Positions 1,228-62,244 of a stretch of DNA of 64,000 nt are shown one piece after another. Source of the stretch: Selaginella moellendorffii (Eukaryota > Plantae > Lycopodiophyta); the NCBI RefSeq assembly GCF_000143415.4, contig NW_003314293.1, positions 713,763-777,762 on the forward strand, read 5' to 3'. The notes beneath the pieces were generated by a model. The model was given only the letters and a program-made list of their open reading frames with translations. It ran no database searches and had not been told where the DNA came from. Every line of letters begins with the position of its first letter. Position 1 is the stretch's first letter. Made by a program: the position numbers and the translations under genes.

Positions 1228-2442
1228 ATGGGGGATAGTGAGCAGCACAGGCATTGGGAATGGTCCAGGCTTCCAGCTGAGCTCCGACACAGGATTCTTC
1301 ATCTTCTTCCGCTCTCTTCGGCTCTCGTCGCCCGAGCGGTATGCAAGGATTGGAAAGACTCGCTCTCGACGTGGTCTGGGCGGAAGTCGTGGTTTCTGGT
1401 GAAGGACGAGCAAGTCGAGCAAGAAGGCAGCTTGAAGTGGTCAATGGTTGATGCGGAGACAGGCAGCTGGATTCGTCTCGGTGGCCTCTCGCGCTTTGCG
1501 ACTTCCGTGGCTGCCGGGGACGGCCTGGTGTGCCTGTGCGTGGGGAATTCCGCGAGGCCCGAGTTTTACGTGGGGAATCCATTGTTTGAGAAGTCATGGC
1601 AGAAGCTACCGGAGCTCCCTCCGCTCAAGACTTTGACACTGGCGAGGCTGGTGCTGAGTGCCTCGGCGCTTACATGCGTCCTGGGCATTGTTTCCGAGGA
1701 GCCACCGGGTGTTACTGTCAGCGCCAGTGTCACTAGCAACAGCGGCAGTGGATCTTCAGGCTTCAAGGTCCTGGTTGGACGCTGCGGGTACATCGTTGTG
1801 TACGAGTCGCGAGCTGGAAAGTGGCGAGAGGTACAGGGAGACACGCCGGCGCTGGCTCTTCAGCTTCTCCAGGAGTCGGACGAGCGCAGCATTGTGCCGG
1901 TGAGACGAGGATCCCAGCTGCTGTGGTCGCCGCTCCGATCCAGCGGAGGTATAGTTGGTTTCGATTTCGCAGCTCTCACTTGGTTTGTCTTGGAAGCAAC
2001 GCTGTTTGAGCGCCTCAGCGCGGCTAGCTTGACTCGAGATCCCAGCTCCGGATCCGTCCTGCTCGTAGGAGCTCACCGGAGCAGCGGCTCTCACCACTAC
2101 AGGCACCTCAAAGTGTGGAGGCTGGACGAGGACGACGAGCTCGGCCAGGAGTGGAAGCCCGTGAACAGGATGAGAGACTACATGGTCCAGGAGATCTCGC
2201 CAAAGGGCTTCTTCGCGGCTCACTGGTGCTTGCGCGAAGCCAAGCTCATGCTGCTCACTTGCACGCTCGAGAAGTTCTCGCCCCAGCTCCGCGACTGGGG
2301 ATTCAAGCGATTGGTGCTGTGGTCGTTTGATCCTCACGCAGCAAAGTGGTCGTCGAATCCTCTGAGAAGACCTCTTCGAGATGTGGATCTGAGCAGCAGC
2401 GTGGTCTACTCTTTCCAGCCGAGGCTGGATTTCAGCCAGTGA
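1228..2442 (+). CDS. F-box protein (intronless) with degenerate kelch/FBA-like C-terminus
   Basis: 404-aa ORF. N-terminal F-box motif WSRLPAELRHRILHLLPLSSALVARAVCKDWK; 'GDGLVCL...VGNPL..SWQKLP' and terminal 'FQPRLD' are typical of plant F-box/kelch proteins. Confidence 0.9.
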   Translation: MGDSEQHRHWEWSRLPAELRHRILHLLPLSSALVARAVCKDWKDSLSTWSGRKSWFLVKDEQVEQEGSLKWSMVDAETGSWIRLGGLSRFATSVAAGDGLVCLCVGNSARPEFYVGNPLFEKSWQKLPELPPLKTLTLARLVLSASALTCVLGIVSEEPPGVTVSASVTSNSGSGSSGFKVLVGRCGYIVVYESRAGKWREVQGDTPALALQLLQESDERSIVPVRRGSQLLWSPLRSSGGIVGFDFAALTWFVLEATLFERLSAASLTRDPSSGSVLLVGAHRSSGSHHYRHLKVWRLDEDDELGQEWKPVNRMRDYMVQEISPKGFFAAHWCLREAKLMLLTCTLEKFSPQLRDWGFKRLVLWSFDPHAAKWSSNPLRRPLRDVDLSSSVVYSFQPRLDFSQ

Positions 2443-3535: not shown

Positions 3536-6439
3536 ATGGTGGTATGTCTTTGTTTTTTCTACAGACTTGTAAATGAAAAGCTGAATCTCTACTTCAAGGT
3601 CTACTCGACGAGCCAAAGCAAAAAAACTTTGGTCAGAGATTTCCATGAGATCCATCAGAATAGAAACAAGGAGATCAGAGATTTGTCGCGCTTGATTGCG
3701 GCTATAAAGACGTGCATCAAGAGCAGGGATCTGGAAATGGGGTACAAACTTCACGCGGAGGCAGCTCAAAGTGGAGACGACTCAAACATTTANNNNNNNN
3801 NNNNNNNNNNNNNNNNNNNNNNNNNNNNNNNNNNNNNNNNNNNNNNNNNNNNNNNNNNNNNNNNNNNNNNNNNNNNNNNNNNNNNNNNNNNNATGTACGC
3901 CAGGTGTGGGAGCTTGACAGACGCTCGCAGGCTTTTCGACAGGATGGATCGCCATGACCTTGTGTCATGGAATGTTATGGTGCTGGGATACGCTGACAGT
4001 GGCTACGCAGAACTGGCACTGGACCTCTTTCAACTCATGCAAGCTGATGGCTTTGGTCCAAACTCTCGAAGCTTTGTAGCCGCCTTCAAAGCTTGTGCTT
4101 GTCTAGCAAAGCAAGAAGACACGGCGCTGATCGATGGGAAGCTTGTGAAGCTCAGGGCTCTCGAGAAAGGCATGGCTCTTCACTCCCAAGCTGCAAGTTT
4201 CGGCTGTGACATGGACAGATTCGTAGCAAACGTGTTGGTGGACTGTTATGCAAACTGTGGTAGCATGGAGGATTCAAGCAGGGTCTTCTACGGGATCCAG
4301 AGTCCGACGGTGGTTTCATGGACTGCATTGGTTCTCGGATATGCTGAAAACGGGCAGGGAGAGATGGCCTTGGAAGTGTTTTCACAGATGCAACACGAGG
4401 ATGCTGAGATGGATTTTCTAAGTTTTGTGGCGGCACTCAAGGCTTGCAGTGTTTTGGCCGTGAAGGAAAAGGCAGCAAAACGAGCCAATGGCTCCTTGGT
4501 GAAGATCATTTCTCTGGAAAGAGCCATGAAAATCCACTCCGAGACGTCAAGGAAGAAGTGCGATTCGGACTTATATGTGGCGAGCTGCCTGGTGGATACT
4601 TACGTCAAGTGTGGGAGCATGCTAGACGCGCGTAGGATTTTTGACAGGATGACGCAGCGGAATGTGGTCTCCTGGAATTCGTTAATCTTGGGGTATGCCG
4701 AGAATGGAGAAGAGGAAGTGGCTTTAGAACTGTTCGGGCGGATGAACAGCGAAGTCTTTAAGCCAGACGCTCAAACTTACGTTGCAGCGTTGAGCGCTTG
4801 CACTCGACTGGCGACTAAAGAAGTACCAAGGGACGCAGAAGATGCCTTTCAGATTTGGGCGAACTTTGTGGACCTGGAGAAGGGAATGGCTGTTCATGCA
4901 CGGGCTGCTACCGATGGCTTCGACTCCAACGTCTACGTTGCAAGCAGTTTGATCGACATGTATTCCAAGTACGGTGTCCCAGACGAAGCTCGAAAGGTGT
5001 TTGACGAGCTCCATCCTCCCAGGAACAACATCGTGACTTGGAATGTCATGATCCAGGGATACGTAGAGAATGGAGAAGCTGAGCTTGCTATTGAGCTGTT
5101 CACGTTGATGCTGCTTGAGGGGACGTGCTCGCCTAATGCTCGAACTTTCGTAGCTGCGTTCAAGGCGTGTACTCTACAAGCAGAGAAGGAACAGGAAGGA
5201 AGCAATCTTCCCAAAGTTATGGCCTTGGAGAAAGGAATGGCTCTTCACCGTTTAGCTTCGGACATGAGGCTAGACTCCGAAGCGTTCGTGGCAAGCTCTT
5301 TGATAGATCTGTACGCGAAGTGCGGCACTATGGACGATGCCTGGAAAGTTTTCGAGAAGACACCAAGGCGGGATATGGTTTTATGGACGGCACTTCTGCT
5401 TGGCTACGTCTCGAATGGTGATGAAGAGCGAGCTCTAGAGCTTGTCAAGTTCGTGGAGCTTGGCGATGATGCTGATCGATCGAGCATTCTCTCGGGACTC
5501 AATCTCTGCGCGTGCTTGGGATCCAGAGGGGAAGTGGACGCAAAGATGGTGTGCCTGGAGAGAGGCATGGCGTTCCACATTCAAGCTTACCATGCCGGCT
5601 GGAATGACTACGAGGTGGCTCGCGGACTTGTGGCGATGTACGCCAAGTGTGGGAGCATGGGGGATGCTCGACGAGTTTTCGACACGATGCCGAGAGACGA
5701 CGTCGCAGCATGGAACTCGATGGTCCTGGGCTATGCCGAGAACAAGCAAGCAGCGCTGGGCTTGGAGCTCTTTCGAGAGATTCCTCCTCGAGTTTTGGAC
5801 GCTCACAGCTTGGCTGCTGCTCTCAAGGCTAGTGGAAGCCTGGCCTCTCTGGGACGGGGCAAAGCCACTCATGCTCTAGCTTGCCGCCTGGGGATGGAAG
5901 AATCTCTCATCGTTGGGACTAGTTTGGTCGACTTCTATGGCAAGTGTGGAAGCATGGTGGACGCTCGACTGGTTTTTGATAAGATCTTTGCCAAGGAGCT
6001 AGCGGCCTGGACAGCTCTCGTGGAAGGCTATGGCCGTCAAGGAAGCTCCAAGCTTGTGATGGAGCTTCTTTGTGGAATGGACGAGGAGGGGTTTCGACCA
6101 GACGCTAAAACTCTGGCTAGCGTTATCACTGCTTGTAGCCACGGTGGCGAGCTAGAGGCCGCCAGGAAACTCTTTGCAGAAGTGATTCCTTCGCAGGATT
6201 ATTTCGTGCGCATGGTGGATCTTCTAGGTAGAGCCAATGAGCTAAATGCCGCAGTAGACATGGTTAGCTCGGTGGAAAGTGTTAGCAACGCTAAGTTGGT
6301 GGTGTTGTGGAGAATTATCCTAGATGCTTGTAGAAGGTGGAAGAATCTTGAGGTGGGAAAGGTGGCATTCAAGCGTTTGATGGATTTGGATGAGTTTGAT
6401 TCAGCGGCTTATGTACTATTCGCATCCAGCTATGATTAA
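3536..6439 (+). CDS. PLS-class pentatricopeptide repeat protein (truncated E domain, no DYW); start uncertain, spans an assembly gap
   Basis: Repeated 'MYAKCGSMxDARRVFD...VSWN..ILGYAENG..ALELF' P-L-S triplets with long 'ALEKGMALH' inserts; ends in E-like 'WRIILDACRRWKNLEVGKVAF...DSAAYVL'. Confidence 0.9.
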   Translation: MVVCLCFFYRLVNEKLNLYFKVYSTSQSKKTLVRDFHEIHQNRNKEIRDLSRLIAAIKTCIKSRDLEMGYKLHAEAAQSGDDSNIXXXXXXXXXXXXXXXXXXXXXXXXXXXXXXXXXXMYARCGSLTDARRLFDRMDRHDLVSWNVMVLGYADSGYAELALDLFQLMQADGFGPNSRSFVAAFKACACLAKQEDTALIDGKLVKLRALEKGMALHSQAASFGCDMDRFVANVLVDCYANCGSMEDSSRVFYGIQSPTVVSWTALVLGYAENGQGEMALEVFSQMQHEDAEMDFLSFVAALKACSVLAVKEKAAKRANGSLVKIISLERAMKIHSETSRKKCDSDLYVASCLVDTYVKCGSMLDARRIFDRMTQRNVVSWNSLILGYAENGEEEVALELFGRMNSEVFKPDAQTYVAALSACTRLATKEVPRDAEDAFQIWANFVDLEKGMAVHARAATDGFDSNVYVASSLIDMYSKYGVPDEARKVFDELHPPRNNIVTWNVMIQGYVENGEAELAIELFTLMLLEGTCSPNARTFVAAFKACTLQAEKEQEGSNLPKVMALEKGMALHRLASDMRLDSEAFVASSLIDLYAKCGTMDDAWKVFEKTPRRDMVLWTALLLGYVSNGDEERALELVKFVELGDDADRSSILSGLNLCACLGSRGEVDAKMVCLERGMAFHIQAYHAGWNDYEVARGLVAMYAKCGSMGDARRVFDTMPRDDVAAWNSMVLGYAENKQAALGLELFREIPPRVLDAHSLAAALKASGSLASLGRGKATHALACRLGMEESLIVGTSLVDFYGKCGSMVDARLVFDKIFAKELAAWTALVEGYGRQGSSKLVMELLCGMDEEGFRPDAKTLASVITACSHGGELEAARKLFAEVIPSQDYFVRMVDLLGRANELNAAVDMVSSVESVSNAKLVVLWRIILDACRRWKNLEVGKVAFKRLMDLDEFDSAAYVLFASSYD
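3793..3892. other. Assembly gap (100 N)
   Basis: Run of 100 N inside the PPR ORF. Confidence 1.
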
Positions 6440-6488
6440 GTGCAAATAATTCACTTGATTATTCTTTCTTTGTAAGAATGCGGCTGCT

Positions 6489-7457
6489 CTAAATGGAGCG
6501 AGCGGCAAAGGCTAGAGCTCCAATACCAATGGTGATAGCAATGGGGCCTCCATACTTGGTGCCAGAGTCTGCCACATTCACGCAAGAATCGAGCATGGAG
6601 TAGCCAGCCGAGTAGAGCTTGCTTCCCGCGATGTTGTAAAGAGCACGAACTGGAGCGAGCAGTGACTGGTATGCATATGGGAGGTATTCGCTTGCACCAA
6701 GGGCATCGAACAGAGAATCTAAGAACCATTCGCTGTGAACAGAGGCCACCACGTTATTGACAAGAATGTTGCCCGACAGTGTCAAGGGGTTGTAGAGTCC
6801 CAGCTTGTCAACCTTTGAGATCTCTGCGTATATCAAGATTGTGTTATTACAGAGCATTAAGAGGTGTGGTTTCTTGTACCTGTGATTGGTGAGGCTCCAG
6901 AGATTGTGGACAGGCTATCGCCAACTTTGAGATCAGCAGCTCGCTTGTAAATTATCTCTCCTTTGGTGTTAACTGGGACAAAGTGACCGGCTGTAAGCTC
7001 CAAGGTGTTGGCTTCGGTCTTGACTTGCACGAATTCAGAGACAACATCTAGATCCTTGTGACCAAACGCGTAGATATCCGAAAATGAATTCTTCCCAACA
7101 GCAACCTGTAGAAACTCATTAATCATGTGAAGCAAAGTGGATTACTAGCTAGGATCTTGCCTTATCTCCAATCTTAAGTTCCTTCATGGTCTTCATTTCT
7201 CCACTGTACATATGAACCATTGCATCACCTAGATAGATATTGCATGGTTACATAGCACAGTGTAATTTGTAGAGAATAACTTTATTACCTGGAAAGCATC
7301 CAGGGTTTTGACATATTCCATTGTTACATGTGAATCCAGTTAGCCCCGCTGTTGTGCAATCAGCAGTAGTAGTGCAACTCACTATATTAGTAGCAAATAC
7401 AGTGGAAAACAATCCAAGAAGAGAGACCACAGCAAACACAGCAGCTAGAGAAGCCAT
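6489..7457 (-). CDS. Hog/Hint-domain precursor copy 1: signal peptide + 4-Cys peptide + Hedgehog-type Hint + SRR-like region + hydrophobic tail (265 aa)
   Basis: Exons 7457-7289, 7228-7161, 7105-6880, 6823-6489 total 798 nt and stay in frame; intron 2 is GC-AG. Protein motifs: NPG|CFPGDAMV, MKELKIGDKV, IYAFGHKD, LELTAGHFV, AADLKVGD, GLYNPLTLSGNILVNNVVASVHS, LLAPVRALY, PIAITIGIGALAFAARSI*. Confidence 0.9.
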
Positions 7458-7964
7458 TGCCTTTCAAATATACTTAAGAAGACACTAAGCATATGAAGCA
7501 TCATTGGCCATGCACTGCTTAAATAGGATGAACTTAAACGTAATTACATGTGATATGATTTTCTGGGGAAGAATATGGGTGAGTGAGCGAAACATCTTAG
7601 CTATATCAATTGTCAAACATCTAGTACATATATTGTCTACCTAGTTCTATATTTTTAAGCAGGTGATGCTTTGGTACACCTGTATAATGCGATGGACTTT
7701 AAAATTGGATAATTCCAGTCTTCAACTATAGTAATTGCACTATTATGAACTAATAAAACCTTGTAATAAATTTTTTAATAAAGTTCTTTAAATGTTAGAA
7801 ATATATGTAAAGCTTTTTGCAATTGCCATAAATTACTTAGAATAATGAGTTTTGATATCATCAATTGAGAATTTATTTACATTTAGAAGGATTATATTAT
7901 TATTATAGTACACACAAACATTTACATGTGTTTACTTGCTCTTGAATATGAACTATTTCATTTC

Positions 7965-8120
7965 ATTTTTCTTTTTTGCCTTTTCATTTTCTTTTCTTTC
8001 ATTTTCATGGCTGGACAAACTCCTTATTTGATTCTAAAGTAACAATTGGTGCAATTTGTGTAATTGCTTGATGCTATATAGTTGCAATTGATCAATCAAA
8101 CTTAGTTGGTAATGACATTC
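7965..8120 (+). mobile_element. Short remnant of the Gypsy family 5' internal/gag-start region
   Basis: Reverse-complement similarity to 24190-24340 (aattgcttgatgc.atat..ttgcaattga...tgacattc). Confidence 0.6.
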
Positions 8121-8467
8121 ATGTCCAAATTAAAATAATCATATGACTAACTACACAAATATTAATATATGGCATTGTAACTGTACACCTCGAACTCACA
8201 CGTATAACTAAAAAAATTAATAAAAAAAACTCCACACATGTGTAAATATATAATGTATGCATACATAATCACATATTCATTGTTTTGTGTTGTAAACTTT
8301 AGTTTCCTCAAGGAAAAAATCCTTACTTTATACTTTTGACATCTATCTTTTTATGATGTTTTAATAAAATATCTTAAGTTCAATATAGTTGGTTAGAAAA
8401 ACCAAGATTAAAATGCTATGACGATAAACATGACAACAGTAATTCTTCATAAAAAAATTTGGCGGCT

Positions 8468-9439
8468 CTAAATGGAGCGAGCTGCAAAGGCTAGAGCTCC
8501 AAGACCAATGGTGACCGCAATGGTGGCTCCATACTTGGTGCCAGAGTCTGCCACATTCACGCAAGAATCGAGCATGGAGTAGCCAGCCGAGTAGAGCTTG
8601 CTTCCAGCGATGTTGTAAAGAGCACGAACTGGAGCGAGCAGTGACTGGTATGCATATGGGAGGTATTCGCTTGCACCAAGGGCATCGAACAGAGAATCTA
8701 AGAACCATTCGCTGTGAACAGAGGCCACTACGTTATTGACAAGAATGTCGCCCGACAGTGTCAAGGGGTTGTAGAGTCCCAGCTTGTCAACCTTTGAGAT
8801 CTCTGCGTATATCAAGATTGTGTTATTACAGAGCATTAAGAGGTGTGGTTTCTTGTACCTGTGATTGGTGAGGCTCCAGAGATTGTGGACAGGCTATCGC
8901 CAACTTTGAGATCAGCAGCTCGCTTGTAAATTATCTCTCCTTTGGTGTTAACTGGGACAAAGTGACCGGCTGTAAGCTCCAAGGTGTTGGCTTCGGCCTT
9001 GACTTGCACGAATTCAGAGACAACGTCTAGATCCTTGTGACCAAATGCGTAGATATCCGAAAATGAATTCTTCCCAACAGCAACCTGTGGAAGCTCATTA
9101 ATCATGTGAAGCAAAGTGGATTACTAGCTAGGATCTTGCCTTATCTCCAATCTTAAGTTCCTTCATGGTCTTCATTTCTCCACTGTACATATGAACCATT
9201 GCATCACCTAGATAGATATTGCATGGTTACATAGCACAGTGTAATTTCTAGAGAATAACTTTATTACCTGGAAAGCATCCAGTGTTGTTTTGACATATTC
9301 CATTGTTACATGTGAATCCAGTTAGCCCCGCTGCTGTGCAATCAGCAGCAGTATTGCACCTCACTATATTGGTAGCAAACACAGTGGAAAACAATCCAAG
9401 AAAAGAGATCACAGCAAACACAGCAGCTAGAGAAGCCAT
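8468..9439 (-). CDS. Hog/Hint-domain precursor copy 2 (266 aa; variant N-terminal peptide)
   Basis: Same 4-exon structure and splice sites as copy 1. Peptide TNIVRCNTAADCTAAGLTGFTCNNGICQNNTG|CFPG; no stops seen. Confidence 0.9.
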
Positions 9440-10970
9440 TGTCTTTCAAATATACTTAAGCAGACACTAAGCTTATGAAGAATCATTGGCCATGCACTGC
9501 TTAAATAGGATGAACTTAAACGTAATTACATGTGATATGATTTTCTGGGGAAGAATATGGGTGAGTGAGCGAAACATCCTTTAGCTATATCAATTGTCAA
9601 ACATCTAGTACATATATTGTCTACCTAGTTCTAGACACTCAGCCGGCACAACAAAATAACTAGTGAAAAAATCCCACTTGGAAAGTGGCATTTTAATCTG
9701 CGAAATGCCCCTTCTGTTCATTGGCAGAGCTTCTGGAACCTGACTGATTCGACCAATTTGCTGCTGCTGCAGCTAGGGCTAGAGTCAAGGTTTCTAAGAG
9801 TATTTTTTATTTTTATTTTGTAAGGGGAAGGGGGGGAGCGGGGGTGTGGGTGAGTGGGCTGGTAAAAAATTGTAAAAGATTAACATAAATGTGCATATAT
9901 ATGCTCAAATTATTGTAATATATATGTGTCACTTACAAAACTATATCTTCAGTTATCCATATTACATTTACATTCTTCTTTAATCACTTTTAACATTTAA
10001 AATGAAGTTAAAATATTAACATAAAAAATGATATGGAAAATCAAGTTGTAAGGAAAATTCTTTATCAATTGACATAATAATGACACACATTTTCCATCTA
10101 ACAATTTAGTAAGTGCAATTTAAATGCCTGAAAATATTGTTTCATGATCAAATTTTGGGTATTCATTGGTATTTGCGGATATCATTGTCAAATGTTATAT
10201 ATATGGGTATGATATTGGACTCTTAGGCATATTGTTGAGTCATAAAAATTTAAGTTGAAATGAATATATATGAAATTGTAAATAAGAGGAAGTTGGTTGA
10301 GTATTAAAAATTTACATTCTTGGATTAAAAGTTATTCTTTTTGTAGTAAAGAAAATTTTCCACAAATTTTCTTAATGGTTGATTTGTTGATTATTTTGCC
10401 CAAAAACCATTTCATTTTTGAAAGCCATTTAGTGAAAGGGTTAAAGTTGACTAAAATTAAAGTAAAAAAGTGGTTGTTGTTTTTTTCCCTTAGGCTTTTC
10501 TTATGTAACATTATATTTGTTGGTAGATTACATCTTATATTTAGTTAAATTTAATGAGAGTAGTTAACTCTAATTAAACTTGACTTAGTTTAAGATAGTG
10601 ATATTTAGCTTAGTTGTTTGCAGTTAAAGTAATAACAGTTTTAGGTATATAAATCCATCTCATAGTCTTCCCTTTAGTTTCAACTAAATGTTAATCATTT
10701 GTGGCTAACCTCTTCATTTGTACTTAGAGTTATTTGTTAAAGATGTTAGTAGGGTTATTGTTGTATGATTGGATTTAAGTAGTCATTTTGTCTGTAATTA
10801 TTTATGTTTCTATATGTTGTATTTAGAGTGTTACTTTTATGTTGGACAAATATATAACTCAATGATGTAAATTTAGTGTTTGAGCCTTATGACAACAAAT
10901 TTAAGAGTGATTGTTAGTTATTTTGTAACTAATGATTATTTATAAATTTCATTATTTTAGAGCTTTGATT

Positions 10971-13080
10971 GTGTATATCAATTACCCTAGCTTATATACA
11001 GGAGCGAGTGGTCCGGATTGAAACCAATCCGACGGCTACCAAAATCCCACTATACTAATATTAGTATATGGCATCATAGCCATACACTTGGCCTTCACAT
11101 CATTCCCTCCTTTCAGAATAATGGAACACCATCAAGGTTCTTTTGTAGATGGGCCGGGATCTGGAAGAACGTTAGGAGGAGGCATTGGCAGATCTGTAAG
11201 TGGTATTAATTGCTTCTGATCCCTTTGTATGAAGCATTTTAACCACTACACATGCGCAATATCTAGAAGATCATTCTGCTAAACATTATTGCAAACTTCA
11301 TAAACTTGTGGTCCAACTTGCCACAACACCCAATACGGTCCTTTCCATTGAGCAATAAACCCCTTAGATAAACCACGTACCTTAAAATGGGGAAAATGGA
11401 CTAACACTAAGTCATCCACTTTGTACTCCGCAAGTGAACGATGATGGGAGTTGTAGCGCCATTGTTGTCACATTTATACATGACTTAAGTGTTCGAAAGA
11501 ATCCACTATGAACGAGAATGCTAGAACACTGTTCGATTGAGGAGGAAGTATCTAACAAAAGTTGCAGAGGCACTAACAAGAGCACCAACTTTCACTCAAC
11601 AAGTCAAGTAATCAAGTAATCAGAAGCAATAATAACATACTCATTACCAGCAGTCGACTATGGAAAAAGTTCTATAAGATCAAATGCCACCAACTCAAAC
11701 GAATGGGAAATTGCAATTGACTCTAATCGTCCTTCCATAGCACGAGGGGGAGTATTACGAACTTGGCACCAAACACAGCTACGCACATACTAGATAATAT
11801 CACGTCGCATCTCCGGCCAATAGAAAGATCTGCGTAGCTTCTTAGTTACACTACAATGCCCTATATACCTACCTAGAAGAGGAGAATCATGATAGCCATG
11901 GAGAAACCATGGAATAAAGATAGAAGGCACCATCAGCCGTAAATGATCATCAAAATAAAGAAGGCTGTCTTCAAGGTATCAGCAAGTGATGCAAGATTCT
12001 CAAACCCATCTTGAAGCCTTTGAATCCACGACTCAATCTTTTGACCTTTGCGAACCTCATCAAAAGAGGGTAGATTTTGCTATGCGCCTTGTGGACACTG
12101 AACATCAAGTGTAGCAACCGCCGACGGCACAGAATCCTCGTCTAAAAAATCCACAGATGCTAGAACAACAAGCTCGTTAAAAACATGAGAAGAGAGTGCA
12201 GAAGGAAGAGGAGCTATAGAAATGCCATCAGCATTAGCTATAAAACTCCCTAGGTGATGAAAAACATCAAAATTATATATCTAAAGCTTCAAAGCCCACC
12301 GAACAGTACGACCAACCAAGTTTTTTCGTTTCAATAATGAAGTAATATTAACATAATCATCTTCAACTAACGTCCGAAAACCATGTAAATATGCATGAAG
12401 TTTCTCAAAACCCTAGACTGCTGCTAAACACTCCTTCTGTAATTCACCTCCACTGATTGCAATGTACGGTTTATATATGCAATGAGATGGCACTGATCAA
12501 GCACACTCGGGCTCATCGCAAAGAACTTCGTCCATCATCCGCTAGAAAGTTGCTAGAGCATTGTTTAAACTAAACGGCATCACCAAAAACTCATACAAAC
12601 TAAATAGTGTATGAAAAGTAGTTTTAAAAATATCTTTTTCGGCCATTGGTACTTGCCAATACCTAGAAGCAAGATCTAGTTTGGTGAACTAATGACTTCG
12701 CCCCAGACGATCTAAAAGATCAACAATATGAGGAAGAGGGTACACATCTTGGCTCATCACTTTGTTTAATGAATGATAGTCAATGTAGAAATGAATACTC
12801 CCATCAGGCTTCGTCATAAGATGAGGTTCACATGCCCAAGGACTTTGCAACTTCCTAATAACACCCTTCTTCAACATCTTCTTGACATTTGCACATAAAA
12901 TCTTAATCTCTTTGGGTGACCAACGACGAATAAAAACCTTGATTGGACGAGCATCCCCGGTTGAAATCGGATGATGTGTAGCAATCTTGGCCCCAGGCGA
13001 TAGATCAAATTCAAAGAGATCAAAATACTCCTTCATGAGCCGGTCAACCACTGCAACACAAAGATTATCGAAGGGATCAG
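10971..13080 (-). mobile_element. Degenerate Ty3/Gypsy fragment (partial 3' LTR 10971-11099, PPT, integrase/RNaseH/RT remnants)
   Basis: RT remnant 'PWACEPHLMTKPDGSIHFYIDYHSLNKV..DVYPLPHI.DLLDRLG'. PPT-like TTCTGAAAGGAGGGAATGA (minus strand) abuts an LTR shared with 24515-24667 and 51505-51681. Confidence 0.88.
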
Positions 13081-13874
13081 AGTGTGGGAGCATGGGGGAT
13101 GCTCGATGAATTTTCGACACGATGCCGAGAGACGATGTCGCAGCATGGAACTCGATGGTCCTGGGCTATGCCGAGAACAAGCAAGCAGCACTAGGCTTGG
13201 AGCTCTTTCAAGAGATTCCTCCTTGAGTTTTGGACGCTCACAGCTTGGCTGCTGCTCTCAAGGCTTGTGGAAGCCTGGCCTCTCTGGGACAGGGCAAAGC
13301 CACTCATGCTCTAGCTTGCCGCATGGGGATGGAAGAATCTCTCACCGTTGGGACTAGTTTGGTCGACTTCTATTGCAAGTGTGGAAACATGGTGGACACT
13401 CGACTGGTTTTTGATAAGATCTTTGCCAAGGAGCTAGCGGCCTGGACAGCTCTCGTGGAAGGCTATGGCCGTCAAGGAAGCTCCAAGCTTGTGATGGAGT
13501 TTCTTTGTGGAATGGAAGAGGAGGGGTTTCGACCAGACGCTAAAACTCTGGCTAGCGTTATCACTGCTTGTAGCCACGGTGGCGAGCTAGAGGCCGCCAG
13601 GAAACTCTTTGCAGAAGTGATTCCTTCGCAGGATTATTTCGTGCGCATGGTGGATCTTCTAGGTAGAGCCAATGAGCTAAATGCCGCAGTAGACATGGTT
13701 AGCTCGGTGGAAAGTGTTAGCAACGCTAAGTTGGTGGTGTTGTGGAGAATTATCCTAGATGCTTGTAGAAGGTGGAAGAATCTTGAGGTGGGAAAGGTGG
13801 CATTCAAGCGTTTGATGGATTTGGATGAGTTTGATTCAGCGGCTTATGTACTATTCGCATCCAGCTATGATTAA
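13081..13874 (+). pseudogene. 5'-truncated duplicate of the PPR gene
   Basis: Copy of 5646-6439 starting mid-repeat, fused to Gypsy RT; two CGA>TGA stops near 13106 and 13224. Confidence 0.88.
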
Positions 13875-13923
13875 GTGCAAATAATTCACTTGATTATTCT
13901 TTCTTTGTAAGAATGCGGCTGCT

Positions 13924-14892
13924 CTAAATGGAGCGAGCGGCAAAGGCTAGAGCTCCAATACCAATGGTGATAGCAATGGGGCCTCCATACTTGGTGCCAA
14001 AGTCTGCCACATTCACGCAAGAATCGAGCATGGAGTAGCCAGCCGAGTAGAGCGTGCTTCCGGCGATGTTGTAAAGAGCACGAACTGGGGCGAGCAGTGA
14101 CTGGTATGCATATGGGAGGTATCCGCTTGCATCAAGGGCATCGAACAGAGAATCTAAGAACCATTCGCTGTGAACAGAGGCCACCACGTTATTGACAAGA
14201 ATGTTGCCCGACAGTGTCAAGGGGTTGTAGAGTCCCAGCTTGTCAACCTTTGAGATCTCTGCGTATATCAAGATTGTGTTATTACAGAGCATTAAGAGGT
14301 GTGGTTTCTTGTACCTGTGATTGGTGAGGCTCCAGAGATTGTGGACAGGCTATCGCCAACTTTGAGATCAGCAGCTCGCTTGTAAATTATCTCTCCTTTG
14401 GTGTTAACTGGGACAAAGTGACCGGCTGTAAGCTCCAAGGTGTTGGCTTCGGTCTTGACTTGCACGAATTCAGAGACAACATCTAGATCCTTGTGACCAA
14501 ACGCGTAGATATCCGAAAATGAATTCTTCCCAACAGCAACCTGTAGAAACTCATTAATCATGTGAAGCAAAGTGGATTACTAGCTAGGATCTTGCCTTAT
14601 CTCCAATCTTAAGTTCCTTCATGGTCTTCATTTCTCCACTGTACATATGAACCATTGCATCACCTAGATAGATATTGCATGGTTACATAGCACAGTGTAA
14701 TTTGTAGAGAATAACTTTATTACCTGGAAAGCATCCAGGGTTTTGACATATTCCATTGTTACATGTGAATCCAGTTAGCCCCGCTGTTGTGCAATCAGCA
14801 GTAGTAGTGCAACTCACTATATTAGTAGCAAATACAGTGGAAAACAATCCAAGAAGAGAGACCACAGCAAACACAGCAGCTAGAGAAGCCAT
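13924..14892 (-). CDS. Hog/Hint-domain precursor copy 3 (duplicate of copy 1, 265 aa)
   Basis: Exons 1-3 appear identical to copy 1; four amino-acid changes in the post-Hint region (DALDASGY, STL, DFG). Confidence 0.88.
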
Positions 14893-16432
14893 TGCCTTTC
14901 AAATATACTTAAGAAGACACTAAGCATATGAAGCATCATTGGCCATGCACTGCTTAAATAGGATGAACTTAAACGTAATTACATGTGATATGATTTTCTG
15001 GGGAAGAATATGGGTGAGTGAGCGAAACATCTTAGCTATATCAATTGTCAAACATCTAGTACATATATTGTCTACCTAGTTCTATATTTTTAAGCAGGGC
15101 ATGCTTTGGTACACCTGTATAATGCGATGGACTTTAAAATTGGAACATTCCAGTCTTCAACTATAGTAATTGCACTATTATGAACTAATAAAACCTTGTA
15201 ATACATTTTTTAATAAAGTTCTTTACATGTTAGAAATATATGTAAAGCTTTTTAGAATTGCCATAAATTACTTAGAATAATGAGTTTTGATATCATCAAT
15301 TGAGGGTGTGGGTGAGTGGGCTGGTAAAAAATTGTAAAAGATTAACATAAATGTGCATATATATGCTCAAATTATTGTAATATATATGTGTCACTTACAA
15401 AACTATATCTTCAGTTATCCATATTACATTTACATTCTTCTTTAATCACTTTTAACATTTAAAATGAAGTTAAAATATTAACATAAAAAATGATATGGAA
15501 AATCAAGTTGTAAGGAAAATTCTTTATCAATTGACATAATAATGACACACATTTTCCATCTAACAATTTAGTAAGTGCAATTTAAATGCCTGAAAATATT
15601 GTTTCATGATCAAATTTTGGGTATTCATTGGTATTTGCGGATATCATTGTCAAATGTTATATATATGGGTATGATATTGGACTCTTAGGCATATTGTTGA
15701 GTCATAAAAATTTAAGTTGAAATGAATATATATGAAATTGTAAATAAGAGGAAGTTGGTTGAGTATTAAAAATTTACATTCTTGGATTAAAAGTTATTCT
15801 TTTTGTAGTAAAGAAAATTTTCCACAAATTTTCTTAATGGTTGATTTGTTGATTATTTTGCCCAAAAACCATTTCATTTTTGAAAGCCATTTAGTGAAAG
15901 GGTTAAAGTTGACTAAAATTAAAGTAAAAAAGTGGTTGTTGTTTTTTTCCCTTAGGCTTTTCTTATGTAACATTATATTTGTTGGTAGATTACATCTTAT
16001 ATTTAGTTAAATTTAATGAGAGTAGTTAACTCTAATTAAACTTGACTTAGTTTAAGATAGTGATATTTAGCTTAGTTGTTTGCAGTTAAAGTAATAACAG
16101 TTTTAGGTATATAAATCCATCTCATAGTCTTCCCTTTAGTTTCAACTAAATGTTAATCATTTGTGGCTAACCTCTTCATTTGTACTTAGAGTTATTTGTT
16201 AAAGATGTTAGTAGGGTTATTGTTGTATGATTGGATTTAAGTAGTCATTTTGTCTGTAATTATTTATGTTTCTATATGTTGTATTTAGAGTGTTACTTTT
16301 ATGTTGGACAAATATATAACTCAATGATGTAAATTTAGTGTTTGAGCCTTATGACAACAAATTTAAGAGTGATTGTTAGTTATTTCGTAACTAATGATTA
16401 TTTATAAATTTCATTATTTTAGAGCTTTGATT

Positions 16433-19400
16433 GTGTATATCAATTACCCTAGCTTATATACAGGAGCGAGTGGTCCGGATTGAAACCAATCCGACGGCTA
16501 CCAAAATCCCACTATACTAATATTAGTATATGGCATCATAGCCATACACTTGGCCTTCACATCATTCCCTCCTTTCAGAATAATGGAACACCATCAAGGT
16601 TCTTTTGTAGATGGGCCGGGATCTGGAAGAACGTTAGGAGGAGGCATTGGCAGATCTGTAAGTGGTATTAATTGCTTCTGATCCCTTTGTATGAAGCATT
16701 TTAACCACTACACATGCACAATATCTAGAAGATCATTCTGCTAAACATTATTGCAAACTTCATAAACTTGTGGTCCAACTTGCCACAACACCTAATACGG
16801 TCCTTTCCATTGAGCAATAAACCCCTTAGATAAACCACGTACCTTAAAATGGGGAAAATGGACTAACACTAAGTCATCCACTTTGTACTCCGCAAGTGAA
16901 CGATGATGGGAGTTGTAGCGCCATTGTTGTCACATTTATACATGACTTAAGTGTTCGAAAGAATCCACTATGAACGAGAATGCTAGAACACTGTTCGATT
17001 GAGGAGGAAGTATCTAACAAAAGTTGCAGAGGCACTAACAAGAGCACCAACTTTCACTCAACAAGTCAAGTAATCAAGTAATCAGAAGCAATAATAACAT
17101 ACTCATTACCAGCAGTCGACTATGGAAAAAGTTCTATAAGATCAAATGCCACCAACTCAAACGAATGGGAAATTGCAATTGACTCTAATCGTCCTTCCAT
17201 AGCACGAGGGGGAGTATTACGAGCTTGGCACCAAACACAGCTACGCACATACTAGATAATATCACGTCGCATCTCCGGCCAATAGAAAGATCTGCGTAGC
17301 TTCTTGGTTACACTACAATGCCCTATATACCTACCTAGAAGAGGAAAATCATGATAGCCATGGAGAAACCATGGAATAAAGATAGAAGGCACCATCAGCC
17401 GTAAATGATCATCAAAATAAAGAAGGCCGTCTTCAAGGTATCAGCAAGTGATGCAAGATTCTCAAACCCATCTTGAAGCCTTTGAATCCACGACTCAATC
17501 TTTTGACCTTTGCGAACCTCATCAAAAGAGGGTAGATTTTGCTATGCGCCTTGTGGACACTGAACATCAAGTGCAGCAACCGCCGACGGCACAGAATCCT
17601 CATCTAAAAAATCCACAGATGCTAGAACAACAAGCTCGTTAAAAACATGAGAAGAGAGTGGAGAAGGAAGAGGAGCTATAGAAATGCCATCAGCATCAGC
17701 TATAAAACTCCCTAGGTGATGAAAAACATCAAAATTATATATCTAAAGCTTCAAAGCCCACCGAACAGTACGACCAACCAAGTTTTTTCGTTTCAATAAT
17801 GAAGTAATATTAACATAATCATCTTCAACTAACGTCCGAAAACCATATAGATATGCATGAAGTTTTGTCGCGCAAAACACGACCCCAACAAGAGCAAGCG
17901 TGAATCTATTGCTCAGCGACGATCTCCGCTAGCACCTCCCTAAGAAAACGAACCCAAGGCTGGCCGCATGTCGGACAGCTAGTCTGCACCCTCTGTTCCC
18001 TTGCCATATGATCCGAGAACCGTCGTTCAATCTCCCTCATTCTCCTTCGCATGATCAGCCTCTGTTCCACTCAAATCACTGCTGGTGGCCTTGCCATGCT
18101 TTTGGACTCCTCTCTTATTGCCAAGGGTTACATTCTACGCCTCTTCACCACCTTATATCTCTCCCAACCCCAAGAGGCACTAGAATATACTGTGCCAGCT
18201 AAGCTAACCCCCTTAACTGATAGCTAAAACCGCAAAAAGATGAAAAATCAGGCTAAGTACTAACCAAGGGCGACTCCAGGCCCTCGACATCATACCGGCA
18301 ACGATAGCACCACGTCCCCGTGTGCCTCAGATGGATAGTATTGCTTCAGGCGAGCTCCGTTGACTGGAGTAGGTAACGGATTACCACTGAAGTCTTCCAG
18401 CTCAGCTGAACCGTTGATGTTCACAGCCTTAACCCGATAAGGCCCGATCCACCGGATTTTCAGCTTTCCAGGACGCTTCCAGTACTTACTCTCGTAAAGC
18501 AAGACCAGATCTCCCACAGAAAAAGTCTTATGGCGTAAATGGCGATCATACCATTTTTTCCGCTGGAACTGCAGAGCTCGGCAAGCTTGGAATGCCTGAA
18601 GATGGTGCTCATCCAACCGGTCCAAAGCTGCTAAACGAGCTTCCACAACCCCATCCCAGTCATAGCTGTGCTCCACAGCCGTCCTCATCGAGTGCACCTC
18701 GAGCTCAAGAGGCAGGATCGCTTCCTGTCCATATACTAGCCGAAAAGGAGTAAATCGGGTGGTTACCTTGTAAGCAATGCGATAAGCCTAGAGAGCGTCC
18801 AAGAGCTTCAAATCCCAGTCACTGGCACTGGCGTTGCAAATCTTCGTCATGGTGTCACACAGCGTCTTGTTAGTCCGCTCAACCTGGCCATTGGCTCTCG
18901 GATGGTAAGGCGTTGAGTGACGATGGGAGATGCCATACTTGGCGGTCAACACCGCAATGACCTCGTTGATGAAGTGAGAACCTCAGTCACTCACCAGCTC
19001 AAGCGGGCAGCCGAACCTCGTGATGATATTCTTGTACAAGAATCCTGCCACCTTCTCCGCTGTATCCACTGGAAAAGCCTCGGCTTCCACCCACTTGGTC
19101 ACGTACTCCGTGCAAACAAGAATGTAGCGATTCCTCCTGGTACGAGTCGGCTTGAACGGTCCCATGAAGTCAATTCCCCACTTCTCAAAGGGAATGGCCG
19201 GAATAATGGGATGCAAAGGCATGCTATCCCGCTTAGTCGGCCGGCCTACACGCTGACAGGGATCACAGCGTTTAACGAAATCCGCCACTTTCCCTGTTTG
19301 CCCTAACTGGTCAAGTTGAGCCCCTTGCTTCGACCGGCGACGATTTTCGCGGGCAATTCCCTCCGGATCGGCAAAAGGAACCGGCGCTTGCACTCCCAGC

Positions 19401-31023: not shown

Positions 31024-32728
31024 ATGCGCAGCGAGATTGGCAGATTTATGCACAGGAAGAGCTTGGTGAGAGCGATGTTTGCCGTGGGCGTGGCCTGGGC
31101 GCTGTTCGTGCTTGTGATTTGGGGAATGCTGCTGGTCGCTTGTGGATCTGTGTCGATCACGGTGGAATCTGCCGGTATGAGCTCACGCACGGAGTTTTTC
31201 CGGTGATTTTTATTTGGTTTTGCATTGTCTCAGGCCAATGCAAGAAGAAGAGCCAGACTTTCCAGTTTTTGGACGCGTGGGGATTCATTCCAAAGCCAAT
31301 TCACCGTAAGAATCGATGCACATTCATCGTAGTTTCTTCGTCCTTGATTCTTGACAGAACTTCTTCGGTTTCTTTTTTTTCTTTTTTTCACGCAGGATGC
31401 TCTATACCGGTTGCTAGAAATCCACAGTTCGTGCAAATTCCATCGTTCCGGCATGACAGTTCTATACTCCGAAAGCTCACATACATCACAAACGATAGAG
31501 TTGCCGAGGCTGATCAAAGCAAGCGTCCACTATTTGGCGGCTATCAGACATGGAAGGAGAGAGACGAGAGTTTTAAGATCAAACCAGCAATGCAGGTGAG
31601 TGAGCTCTTCTACTGCTTCGATTCCGTTTTTTGATGCATTTTTGCGTGGTAGTGCTTGATAGAATCGTCCTGTCTCTTTGGAAACTTTGTAGGTTCATTG
31701 TGGATTCATGAATAATTCTGGGGGTGACATTCATCCACGGGACAAGACATATCTCAAGAGGTGTGAATTTGTGGTTGCCTCAGGAATTTTTGACGGCTAC
31801 GACATGCCTCACCAGCCTTCCAACCTGAGCGACGCCTCTCGATCGCTCTTTTGCTTCGCCATGGTGGTGGACGAGATCTCTCTGGACAGCATCAAGGCCG
31901 AGGGCTTGCTCACCGAGGACGACAAAGGAGGGAGGTGGTCAGGCATCTGGCGGCTAGTTCTTCTCAAGAACTTGCCGTATGACGAGCCTCGCCGGAACGG
32001 CAAGGTACCCAAGCTCCTCACTCACAGGATCTTTCCAGCGGCGAAGTATAGCATCTGGATCGATGGAAAGATGGAGCTGGTCGTGGACCCAATTCTCATA
32101 CTTGAGAGGTTTGGAACCTCCAGCGTCTCTCTCACTCTTGTTTCTAACTCGTTTGTTCGTTCGTTGCATAGATATCTCTGGCGAGGCGGGCATAAGTTCG
32201 CCATCGCTCGACACAAACACCACAAGAGCATTTACGAAGAGGCCGATGCCAACAAGCGGAGGAAGAGATACGCGAGGCCGCTGATAGACAAACACATGGA
32301 GATCTACAAGCGCGAAGGCATGCAACCATGGAGCAAAGCCAAGCTCCCAGTTCTTAGCGGTAAGTCAGCTCCAATTCTTCCAACGTTCCTCGGAGCAAAG
32401 TTCGATTTTTCCAGATGTTCCAGAGGGAGCAGTGATCATCCGCGAGCACACTCCACTCACGAACTTGTTCTGCTGCCTGTGGTTCAACGAGGTGAACCGA
32501 TTCACGCCGCGCGACCAGCTGAGCTTCGGCTACGTTGTCCACCGATTGAACGGCTCCTTCCCCTTGTTCATGTTCCCAAACTGCGAGTACAACGCGCTCT
32601 TCGTCCTCCACAAGCACACGCGCGAGCACTCGTCCAAGGTGGAATGGGTGAAGACGCTGGACGAGCTCAAGGACGAGAGCATCGCGTTCGAGACGAGGGC
32701 CGGGCTGGGCTTGCTCGGGGATCGTTGA
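31024..32728 (+). CDS. DUF616 family putative glycosyltransferase (MUCI70-like), multi-exon type II membrane protein
   Basis: N-terminal TM; 'PLFGGYQTWKERDESF', 'VHCGF', 'VVASGIFDGYD', 'LPYDEPRRNGKVPKLLTHRIFP..KYSIWIDGK', 'NLFCCLWFNEVNRFTPRDQLSF'. Confidence 0.9.
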
Positions 32729-32825
32729 CCGCCCGTTGGCCGACCGTTAATCGCAGCCGGAATCCAACGGCTGCGATAACCATATAAAATCGTCTAGGGG
32801 GGGATTTCTAGGGTTCTAACACAAA

Positions 32826-62218: not shown

Positions 62219-62244
62219 ATCACTTTGGCAAGAGTGTGAAATTT

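What the first reader, a model, noticed from the sequence alone, without database searches (positions are those of the whole stretch)
6489..14892. Three Hedgehog-style autoprocessing (Hog/Hint) precursors carrying a small secreted four-Cys peptide in a land plant
Seen in sequence: manual splicing yields an intact 265-aa protein with a 22-aa signal peptide, the 31-aa peptide TNIVSCTTTADCTTAGLTGFTCNNGICQNPG (C-x5-C-x9-C-x4-C), then G53|C54-F-P-G. It continues with MKELKIGDKV, T117-x-x-H120 (LELTAGHFV), AADLKVGD, GLYNPLTLSGNILVNNVVAS, an amphipathic 'YQSLLAPVRALY' and a hydrophobic C-tail. Established: these motifs match the Hedgehog Hog domain (G|CF cleavage site, TxxH block, GxYAPLT..G.I.VN.V.AS, FAP.R sterol-recognition helix), which self-cleaves by N-S acyl shift and couples cholesterol to the released N-fragment. 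Seed plants are not known to have Hedgehog. Inference: a secretory precursor that releases a ~3-kDa disulfide-bonded peptide, possibly sterol-modified, i.e. a candidate lipidated signalling or defence peptide system. Caveat: I recall Hog domains being noted in some non-seed plants, algae and protists, so the domain itself may not be new. I know of no functional description of this cargo or array.
Basis: partly seen in the sequence, partly recalled or inferred. Interest (0 to 1): 0.92.

Follow-up and report, generated by a model that had tools for sequence, protein, structure and literature searches.

The report
Spikemoss Hog genes with mini-peptide cargo
Three intact, transcribed spikemoss (Selaginella moellendorffii) genes each join a small secreted four-cysteine peptide to a Hedgehog-type self-cleaving domain. 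The gene family has been published since 2008 and these genes are already in RefSeq, so only the small cargo, some catalytic differences and the untested function are new.

Summary
Three 4-exon genes lie on the minus strand at 6489-7457, 8468-9439 and 13924-14892. They encode 265/266-aa proteins made of a signal peptide, a 31-32-aa four-Cys peptide, G|CFPG, a Hint domain, a conserved helical region and a C-terminal hydrophobic anchor.

- **Splicing:** RNA-derived contigs from four studies skip exactly the three predicted introns.
- **Domain:** the full protein scores 93 bits on Pfam Hint. Its model superposes on Drosophila Hedgehog-C (TM 0.86).
- **Already annotated:** the window is S. moellendorffii scaffold GL377597.1. 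Copy 1 is identical to RefSeq XP_024537580.1 ('warthog protein 6').
- **Already published:** Bürglin (2008) reported Hog proteins in Selaginella and moss. This scan has noted other paralogs in the same genome.

Points not found in the papers I could search:
- The mini-cargo subfamily appears restricted to Selaginella. Its cargos are four-Cys peptides, Pro-rich modules or only 4-6 residues.
- Histidine is invariant at the animal general-base Asp position.
- The Cys143 that animal Hedgehog requires is absent.
- The post-Hint region shows no detectable homology to the animal sterol-recognition region.

Self-cleavage is likely. Sterol attachment is unproven. Verdict: new member of a known kind, moderate interest.

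The parts
6489..7457 (-). Copy 1, a Hog precursor gene of 4 exons (7457-7289, 7228-7161, 7105-6880, 6823-6489), 265 aa. It is identical to RefSeq XP_024537580.1.
   Evidence: Splice model. Identity to P0151. RNA contigs skip all three introns. Pfam Hint 93.3 bits.
7392..7457 (-). Signal peptide, residues 1-22, ending VFA|T.
   Evidence: Hydrophobic N-terminal segment with Kyte-Doolittle score above 2 and a predicted helix at 2-22. The cleavage site is inferred from the -3/-1 rule only. No signal-peptide predictor was available.
7299..7391 (-). Cargo, the 31-aa peptide T23-G53 with Cys spacing C-x5-C-x9-C-x4-C.
   Evidence: Translation. The four Cys are conserved in all alleles, while positions 27, 29, 31, 36 and 52 vary. 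Model confidence is low, pLDDT 50-60. The late-nodulin hit is sub-threshold.
7296..7298 (-). Codon of Cys54, the predicted nucleophile (Cys1 of the Hint module). The scissile bond is G53|C54.
   Evidence: Cys is present in 45 of 46 ungapped family members. It aligns with Cys1 of 6TYY/1AT0.
6738..7298 (-). Hint module, residues 54-183, interrupted by three introns. It contains H95 (7060-7058), T117 (6994-6992), H120 (6985-6983) and V183 (6740-6738).
   Evidence: Pfam residues 49-186. Foldseek match to 6TYY/1AT0 at TM 0.86, rmsd 2.1 A. Residue mapping.
6552..6737 (-). Post-Hint helical region, residues 184-245 (candidate adduct-recognition region), with the family motif HSxWFLD...LPxxYQxxLxPxRxLY.
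   Evidence: Five predicted helices between residues 190 and 244, with pLDDT mostly above 90. S185, D190 and R214 are invariant. H184, W187, P203, Q207 and P212 are at least 90% conserved. The region is not aligned to the animal SRR.
6492..6548 (-). C-terminal hydrophobic tail, residues 247-265, a probable membrane anchor.
   Evidence: Hydropathy 1.54 over 19 residues and a predicted helix at 249-264. Relatives end in short basic tails after the hydrophobic stretch, which favours a transmembrane anchor over a GPI signal. This is an inference.
8468..9439 (-). Copy 2, a Hog precursor gene of 4 exons (9439-9268, 9207-9140, 9084-8859, 8802-8468), 266 aa. The cargo differs at 5 residues and has one extra codon (..QNNTG|CF).
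   Evidence: RefSeq models it without exon 1 (P0177, 206 aa), but exon 1 and its splice donor are intact here. One copy-2-specific base (6627 C>A) appears in RNA contigs.
13924..14892 (-). Copy 3, a Hog precursor gene of 4 exons (14892-14724, 14663-14596, 14540-14315, 14258-13924), 265 aa. It is identical to RefSeq XP_024537579.1.
   Evidence: Six copy-3-specific bases in exon 4 are seen in RNA contigs.
13081..15304 (.). Segmental duplicate of 5646-7869 (98.7% identical). It carries copy 3 and a truncated copy of the neighbouring PPR gene.
   Evidence: Self-BLAST. ORF 13230-13874 matches the 3' end of the PPR ORF 3536-6439.

Best explanation
These are three expressed paralogs of the Hog (Hint plus adduct-recognition region) protein family of non-seed plants. 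They belong to a mini-cargo subfamily seen here only in Selaginella.

Proposed mechanism:
1. Each protein enters the ER through its signal peptide.
2. It stays tethered by a C-terminal hydrophobic anchor, and the cargo's four Cys form two disulfides.
3. The Hint module self-cleaves at G53|C54. Cys54 attacks the Gly53 carbonyl (N-to-S acyl shift), helped by T117/H120.
4. His95 stands where animal Hedgehog has the general-base Asp.
5. The thioester is then resolved by a nucleophile held by the strongly conserved helical region after the Hint fold. That nucleophile could be a membrane sterol or other lipid hydroxyl, or else water.
6. This releases a 31-32-residue peptide whose C-terminal Gly may carry a lipid ester.

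Shown here: gene structure, transcription, Hint fold and family membership, conservation of the catalytic residues, and fast evolution of the cargo.

Inferred: secretion, cleavage, disulfides, the nature of any adduct, and the peptide's role (signalling or defence).
For: - **Gene models and RNA:**
- **Domain:** Pfam Hint 93.3 bits. The AF2 model has pLDDT above 90 over residues 54-240. Foldseek best hits are Drosophila Hedgehog-C 6TYY and 1AT0. The family profile scores E 5.8e-33 against 6TYY.
- **Catalytic columns in 53 relatives:** Cys1 45/46, His at the D46 position 50/50, Thr/Ser69 52/52, His72 52/52.
- **His as general base:** the engineered Asp-to-His Hedgehog-C mutant keeps its structure and cholesterolysis activity (PMC9163320, citing Zhao et al. 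2019). PDB 6TYY is that mutant and is the best match.
- **Post-Hint region:** S185, D190 and R214 are invariant, which argues for a constrained function beyond the fold.
- **Selection:** the Hint part is under purifying selection, with dN 0.006 against dS 0.032. Over the whole non-cargo part dN is about 0.012-0.017, while cargo dN is about 0.07 with all four Cys kept.
- **Cargo diversity:** paralogs and relatives place very different cargos in front of the same CFPG junction, as expected for a cargo-releasing module. Examples are Pro-rich modules, a hevein chitin-binding domain, Cys-rich domains and a ~220-aa domain.
Against: - No biochemical data exist for any plant Hog.
- The position of Hedgehog Cys143 is Val here, and A/S/V/T in most relatives. 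C143A and C143D block processing of human SHH in cells (PMC12054796).
- The animal sterol-recognition region is not detectably homologous, so sterol transfer has no direct support.
- Some paralogs have cargos of only 4-6 residues. This questions whether the cargo is the functional product.
- The cargo fold is predicted with low confidence.
Confidence: 0.6

Rival explanations
1. The protein self-cleaves but attaches no lipid. The thioester is simply hydrolysed, and the Hog part acts as a self-removing, membrane-anchored pro-domain that times the release of a soluble secreted peptide.
For: No homology to the animal SRR was detected. Cys143 is absent. The C-terminal anchor on the Hog part would already hold the precursor at the membrane until cleavage.
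Against: The post-Hint helical region is as conserved as the active site, with invariant S185, D190 and R214. That is hard to explain if water is the nucleophile. His at the general-base position is invariant, and in Hedgehog this residue serves the second, nucleophile-activating step (PMC9163320).
Confidence: 0.25
2. The Hint module is catalytically dead. The protein is an uncleaved type I membrane protein that displays a small Cys-knotted tip.
For: Cys143 is reported as required in animal Hedgehog (PMC12054796) and is Val here.
Against: Cys1, TxxH and His95 are nearly invariant across 53 diverse relatives that all lack a fixed Cys143. Inteins and bacterial intein-like domains, the next-best structural matches, cleave without a Cys143 equivalent (general knowledge of inteins, not tested here). 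The Hint part is under purifying selection.
Confidence: 0.08
3. The cargo is an unconstrained linker, and the functional unit is the membrane-anchored Hog domain itself.
For: Sister paralogs carry only TNTTG or TNTNNS before the CFPG junction. Cargo dN/dS is about 1 or higher. No other protein shares the cargo.
Against: All four Cys and the AGLTGFTCNNGICQN core are identical in every allele, while changes cluster in the first loops. The second four-Cys type groups with this one on the tree and lies next to it on the other scaffold. This suggests the Cys peptide has been retained since an older duplication.
Confidence: 0.07

Closest known systems
pSm Hog and pPp Hog of Bürglin 2008 (BMC Genomics 9:127, PMC2362128)
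   Same: Same species and same Hog family: a signal peptide, the CFPGDA junction, the YAFGHKD and LELTxGHF motifs, motifs J and K, and a hydrophobic C-terminus. The published pSm Hog is 60-65% identical in the Hog part.
   Different: The published pSm Hog has a cargo of about 4 residues (TNTS|CFPG). pPp and pSl Hog carry a ~220-aa upstream domain. The four-Cys cargo and this gene array are not in that paper.
RefSeq XP_024537580.1 / XP_024537579.1 'warthog protein 6' (S. moellendorffii)
   Same: Identical to copies 1 and 3.
   Different: The name is automatic and comes from the Hog domain. The 31-aa cargo gave no above-threshold Pfam family hit. Copy 2 is modelled in RefSeq without exon 1.
Animal Hedgehog C-terminal autoprocessing domain (Drosophila Hh-C, PDB 1AT0; human SHH-C)
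   Same: The Hint fold (TM 0.86), the G|CFPG junction, Cys1 and TxxH.
   Different: There is no HhN signalling domain. His replaces the general-base Asp46/303. Val replaces Cys143/400. The SRR does not align. This protein has a C-terminal membrane anchor. No Patched/Smoothened pathway is implied.
Engineered Hedgehog-C D46H mutant (PDB 6TYY)
   Same: His at the general-base position. It is the best sequence and structure match. It is reported to keep activity and to accept more sterols (PMC9163320).
   Different: It is an engineered animal protein. Here the His is the natural, invariant state of a whole plant and protist clade.
Nematode Hog proteins (warthog, groundhog, quahog) and choanoflagellate Hoglet
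   Same: The same principle: unrelated secreted cargos placed in front of a Hog domain (PMC2362128).
   Different: The cargos are unrelated. The adduct is unknown in these proteins too.
Legume NCR / late-nodulin peptides (Pfam PF07127)
   Same: A signal peptide followed by a short peptide with C-x5-C ... C-x4-C spacing. The hit is weak, at 16-24 bits.
   Different: The score is below the 30.4-bit cut-off. NCRs are free-standing precursors of one legume clade. The resemblance is in Cys spacing only.

Membership tests
Hint module / Hog domain (Pfam PF01079) | Profile score above the curated cut-off | tested here: met
   93.3 bits, E 2.1e-26, against a cut-off of 29.7. The exon pieces hit collinearly.
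Hint module / Hog domain (Pfam PF01079) | Hint fold | tested here: met
   The AF2 model has pLDDT above 90 over residues 54-240. Foldseek gives 6TYY at E 7e-14 and 1AT0 at E 1e-12, with TM 0.86 and rmsd 2.1-2.2 A.
Hint module / Hog domain (Pfam PF01079) | Nucleophilic Cys1 after a small residue (G|CF) | tested here: met
   G53|C54-F-P-G. Cys is present in 45/46 relatives.
Hint module / Hog domain (Pfam PF01079) | TxxH motif (block B) | tested here: met
   T117 and H120. Thr/Ser in 52/52 and His in 52/52 relatives.
Hedgehog-type cholesterolysis domain (animal HhC) | General-base Asp46 (Drosophila D303) | tested here: not met
   His95 aligns with it, and His is present in 50/50 relatives. The D46H mutant of fly HhC is reported active (PMC9163320), so the function may be kept.
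Hedgehog-type cholesterolysis domain (animal HhC) | Cys143 of the SCYA motif (branched intermediate; disulfide with Cys1) | tested here: not met
   Val183 in all three copies. Relatives have A16, S13, V10, T7 and C7.
Hedgehog-type cholesterolysis domain (animal HhC) | Sterol-recognition region (helix-loop-helix, motifs K and L, HWY) | tested here: inconclusive
   The Pfam match ends at profile position 162/213. The family profile stops at motif J on full-length fly and human Hedgehog chains. Even so, helices are confidently predicted at 190-244, and there is an 'AP.R' motif that Bürglin calls motif K (PMC2362128). No HWY motif is present.
Hedgehog-type cholesterolysis domain (animal HhC) | Demonstrated self-cleavage with a sterol ester on the released fragment | not testable with these tools
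   This needs protein expression and mass spectrometry.
Hedgehog ligand proper | N-terminal HhN (Hedge) signalling domain | tested here: not met
   The cargo is 31 aa, and no HhN-type family appeared in the Pfam scan.
Intein | C-terminal splice junction and a C-extein that is ligated | tested here: not met
   Intein_splicing scores 15.2 bits against a cut-off of 35.8. The Hint fold is followed by a helical region and an anchor, not by an extein.
Late nodulin / NCR peptides (PF07127) | Profile score above the cut-off | tested here: not met
   23.6, 18.9 and 16.4 bits against a cut-off of 30.4.

The most novel reading that the evidence does not exclude
The plant and protist Hog clade is defined by an invariant His general base, no Cys143, a conserved HSxWFLD...LPxxYQxxLxPxR helical region and a membrane anchor. 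On this reading it is a working lipid-transfer device that esterifies a phytosterol or another membrane lipid onto the C-terminal Gly of small secreted cargos. In Selaginella it would then supply lipid-anchored mini-peptides (four-Cys peptides, AGP/extensin-like glycomodules, tiny glycopeptides). That would be a protein-lipidation route in land plants parallel to GPI anchoring, and one lost in seed plants.
Probability: 0.22. Interest if true: 0.85.

Novelty: new member of a known kind. Interest (0 to 1): 0.42.

Why it matters
Covalent attachment of a sterol to a protein is so far known only for animal Hedgehog ligands. The papers searchable here show no functional study of the homologous Hog domains of bryophytes, lycophytes, ferns and algae since they were catalogued in 2008.

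These Selaginella genes are a compact test case. They have a 31-residue cargo, clear catalytic residues and good expression.

Showing that the natural His-type Hog domain cleaves, and identifying what it attaches, would tell two things:
- whether protein sterylation exists in plants;
- how the chemistry works without Cys143.

The rapidly changing four-Cys cargo would also be a candidate new class of plant signalling or defence peptide.

As it stands, the finding mainly re-discovers annotated members of a published family.

Tried and rejected
1. **NCR/late-nodulin membership of the cargo.** Rejected. The hits are below threshold and reflect the signal peptide plus Cys spacing.
2. **Search for the cargo in other proteins.** A search restricted to residues 20-60 of P0151 found only its own cluster. 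It covers proteins of 146-464 aa only, so shorter free-standing peptides were not examined.
3. **Homology of the post-Hint region to the animal SRR.** Not found by Pfam or by the family profile against full-length Hedgehog chains. A single-sequence phmmer alignment to SHH residues 341-394 was insignificant, at E 0.84.
4. **Horizontal origin.** Not supported. Relatives occur in moss (Ceratodon), liverwort (Marchantia paleacea), lycophyte (Diphasiastrum), fern (Adiantum) and green algae (Coccomyxa, Myrmecia). Deep branches of the tree are unresolved, so no formal test was made.
5. **Assembly artefact as the source of the three copies.** Unlikely. Copy-specific bases of copies 2 and 3 occur in RNA contigs. 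RNA depth cannot rank the copies.
6. **Literature.** Searches for later functional work on plant Hog proteins returned only Bürglin 2008 and papers citing it.
7. **GPI signal versus transmembrane tail.** No predictor was available, so the choice rests on inspection only.
Full report
**What is there**

The minus strand carries three near-identical 4-exon genes at 6489-7457, 8468-9439 and 13924-14892.
- Splicing the four exons gives open frames of 265, 266 and 265 codons. The exons of copy 1 are 7457-7289, 7228-7161, 7105-6880 and 6823-6489.
- The introns are 60, 55 and 56 nt, and the second has a GC-AG donor in every copy.
- The protein has six parts, in order:
  1. a hydrophobic N-terminal signal sequence;
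  2. a 31-residue peptide with four Cys (C-x5-C-x9-C-x4-C);
  3. the junction G53|C54-F-P-G;
  4. a Hint domain with H95, T117 and H120;
  5. a helical region;
  6. a hydrophobic C-terminal tail.

**Is the gene real and expressed?**

Contigs of four sequencing runs from four studies were laid on 6300-7700.
- They skip 6823>6880, 7104>7160 (position free by 3 nt) and 7226>7287 (cut 2 nt further). These are exactly the three predicted introns.
- Single contigs in X1 and X2 join exon 1 to the Hint exons. Loose ends in X7 and X9 read into the end of exon 1.
- Intron-less contigs are spliced RNA, so the refuting condition 'transcripts not joining exon 1 to the Hint exons' is not met.
- Bases specific to copy 3 (six sites in exon 4) and one base specific to copy 2 also occur in these contigs. 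More than one copy is therefore probably transcribed.
- Two further variants (6579, 6603) match none of the three copies and point to another allele or copy.

**Identity of the organism and annotation status**

- The spliced copy 1 protein is identical to P0151 = XP_024537580.1. Copy 3 is identical to P0172 = XP_024537579.1. Both are named 'warthog protein 6 [Selaginella moellendorffii]'.
- The locus is scaffold GL377597.1 of assembly GCA_000143415.2, where three Hint genes are called.
- RefSeq models copy 2 without exon 1 (206 aa), although exon 1 is intact in the window.
- The 2011 models (211 aa) skipped the cargo and the catalytic Cys.

**Domain evidence**

- Each Hint exon alone hits Pfam PF01079 collinearly. 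The whole protein scores 93.3 bits, E 2e-26, against a cut-off of 29.7.
- An AlphaFold model built with a 53-sequence alignment has pLDDT above 90 over residues 54-240.
- Its best PDB matches are the Drosophila Hedgehog autoprocessing domain: 6TYY at E 7e-14 and 1AT0, with TM 0.86 and rmsd 2.1 A. Bacterial intein-like domains and inteins follow.
- A profile of the family finds 6TYY at E 5.8e-33.

**How it resembles and differs from Hedgehog-C**

Similarities, across 53 relatives:
- the nucleophile Cys1 is kept in 45/46;
- the TxxH Thr/Ser is kept in 52/52 and the His in 52/52.

Differences:
1. The general-base Asp (D46 in Hint numbering, D303 in fly) is His in 50/50 relatives.
   - The review PMC9163320 reports that the engineered D303H mutant keeps structure and activity and accepts more sterols.
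   - 6TYY is that mutant and is the best match here.
2. The Cys of the SCYA motif (C143) is Val in these copies and A/S/V/T in most relatives. PMC12054796 reports that C143A and C143D block SHH processing in cells and that C143 forms a branched intermediate. This clade must work without that step.
3. The animal sterol-recognition region does not align.
   - The Pfam match stops at profile position 162 of 213.
   - The family profile stops at motif J on full-length fly and human Hedgehog.
   - Instead there is a confidently predicted helical region (residues 190-244) with invariant S185, D190 and R214 and near-invariant H184, W187, P203, Q207 and P212.
4. The proteins end in a hydrophobic helix, usually followed by a few basic residues. 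I read this as a membrane anchor. That is an inference.

**The family and its cargos**

- Bürglin (2008, PMC2362128) reported Hog proteins in S. moellendorffii, S. lepidophylla and Physcomitrella.
- His supplement shows that pSm Hog is the short-cargo paralog (TNTS|CFPG). It also shows that the moss protein and the S. lepidophylla EST share a ~220-aa upstream domain. The four-Cys cargo is not in that paper.
- In the databases S. moellendorffii has more than ten Hint genes, with five kinds of cargo:
  1. four-Cys type A (this window);
  2. four-Cys type B (P0004);
  3. Pro-rich AGP/extensin-like modules;
  4. 5-6 residues only;
  5. the long domain.
- On a maximum-likelihood tree the mini-cargo Selaginella genes form one clade (support 82/99). 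The two four-Cys types group together (82/91).
- On scaffold GL377610.1, which has the same flanking genes, one type A gene lies head to head with a type B gene.
- Relatives with other cargos occur in Ceratodon, Marchantia paleacea, Diphasiastrum, Adiantum, Coccomyxa and Myrmecia. One relative of unknown origin carries a hevein chitin-binding cargo.
- The distribution fits vertical descent with loss in seed plants, as Bürglin proposed.

**Evolution of the cargo**

- Between alleles and copies, the cargo has 5 nonsynonymous against 0-1 synonymous changes, giving dN of about 0.07.
- The rest of the protein has dN of about 0.012-0.017 at similar dS.
- All changes lie in the first loops and the spacer before the cleavage site. 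The four Cys and the AGLTGFTCNNGICQN core are invariant.
- The counts are small. This is suggestive, not proof, of diversifying evolution.
- The cargo gives only sub-threshold hits to late-nodulin peptides. No other protein in the searched length range shares it.

**Mechanism proposed**

1. ER entry, with tethering by the C-terminal anchor.
2. N-to-S acyl shift at G53|C54.
3. Resolution of the thioester by a nucleophile positioned by the conserved helical region, activated by or electrostatically helped by His95.
4. Release of a two-disulfide 31-32-residue peptide.

I put cleavage at roughly 0.7 and a lipid or sterol adduct at roughly 0.3. Neither can be tested with these tools.

**Genomic context**

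- The three copies lie in a segmental duplication. 5646-7869 matches 13081-15304 at 98.7%, and 9842-12403 matches 15304-17865 at 99.5%. The duplication also copied the 3' end of a PPR gene and retroelement fragments.
- The rest of the window holds ordinary plant genes: F-box, PPR including a DYW type, TOD1/MUCI70, TCP and ABC.

**Earlier notes of this scan**

- One note had already named the genome. I confirmed the name independently.
- Other notes had flagged seven other Hog paralogs on other pieces of this genome. Follow-up verdicts there agree with mine: a known family with untested function.

**Verdict**

The Hint/Hog precursor is real, but SRR homology and a sterol adduct are unsupported.
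- Novelty is limited to a new cargo subtype and to catalytic peculiarities of a known, annotated family.

Noticed in passing
window 9268-9439 (copy 2, exon 1): RefSeq models copy 2 as a 206-aa protein starting at MVHMYSGE. That model lacks the signal peptide, the cargo and the catalytic Cys. Yet an intact exon 1 with ATG and a GT donor is present, and its counterpart on the other scaffold is modelled in full (266 aa).
   Followed up: partly
L002 8806-9729 (-) and 10001-10972 (+), scaffold GL377610.1: The syntenic scaffold, probably the other haplotype, has only one type A gene. Next to it, head to head, lies a type B four-Cys Hog gene that is absent from this window. The array therefore varies in structure between the two scaffolds.
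   Followed up: partly
window 6579 and 6603: RNA contigs of two runs carry C>T and G>T variants that match none of the three window copies. This suggests a further allele or copy elsewhere.
   Followed up: no
window 7161, 9140 and 14596 (intron 2 donors): The second intron of all three copies uses a GC-AG donor (AAG|GCAAGA). RNA contigs confirm it is spliced.
   Followed up: yes
window 13230-13874 and 11000-13100: A truncated duplicate of the 3' end of the PPR gene (3536-6439) lies beside copy 3. Retroelement-like ORFs lie between the copies, with weaker repeats at 44-48 kb.
   Followed up: partly
protein P0020 (Logan assembly, organism unknown): This Hog protein has a hevein-type chitin-binding domain as cargo (PF00187, 36 bits). 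It hints at defence-related cargos in this clade.
   Followed up: no
paralogs P0152, P0155 and P0156 (other scaffolds): These Selaginella Hog proteins would have mature cargos of only 5-6 residues (TNTTG, TNTNNS) that contain N-glycosylation sequons. Copy 2 here also gains a sequon (NNT) just before the cleavage site.
   Followed up: no
window 3793-3892: A 100-N assembly gap lies inside the PPR gene upstream of copy 1.
   Followed up: no
window 1228-2442, 31708-32787, 39448-40605, 60521-63951: Ordinary neighbours: an F-box/beta-propeller gene, a TOD1/MUCI70 glycosyltransferase-like gene, a TCP transcription factor and two PPR genes, one with a DYW deaminase domain.
   Followed up: partly
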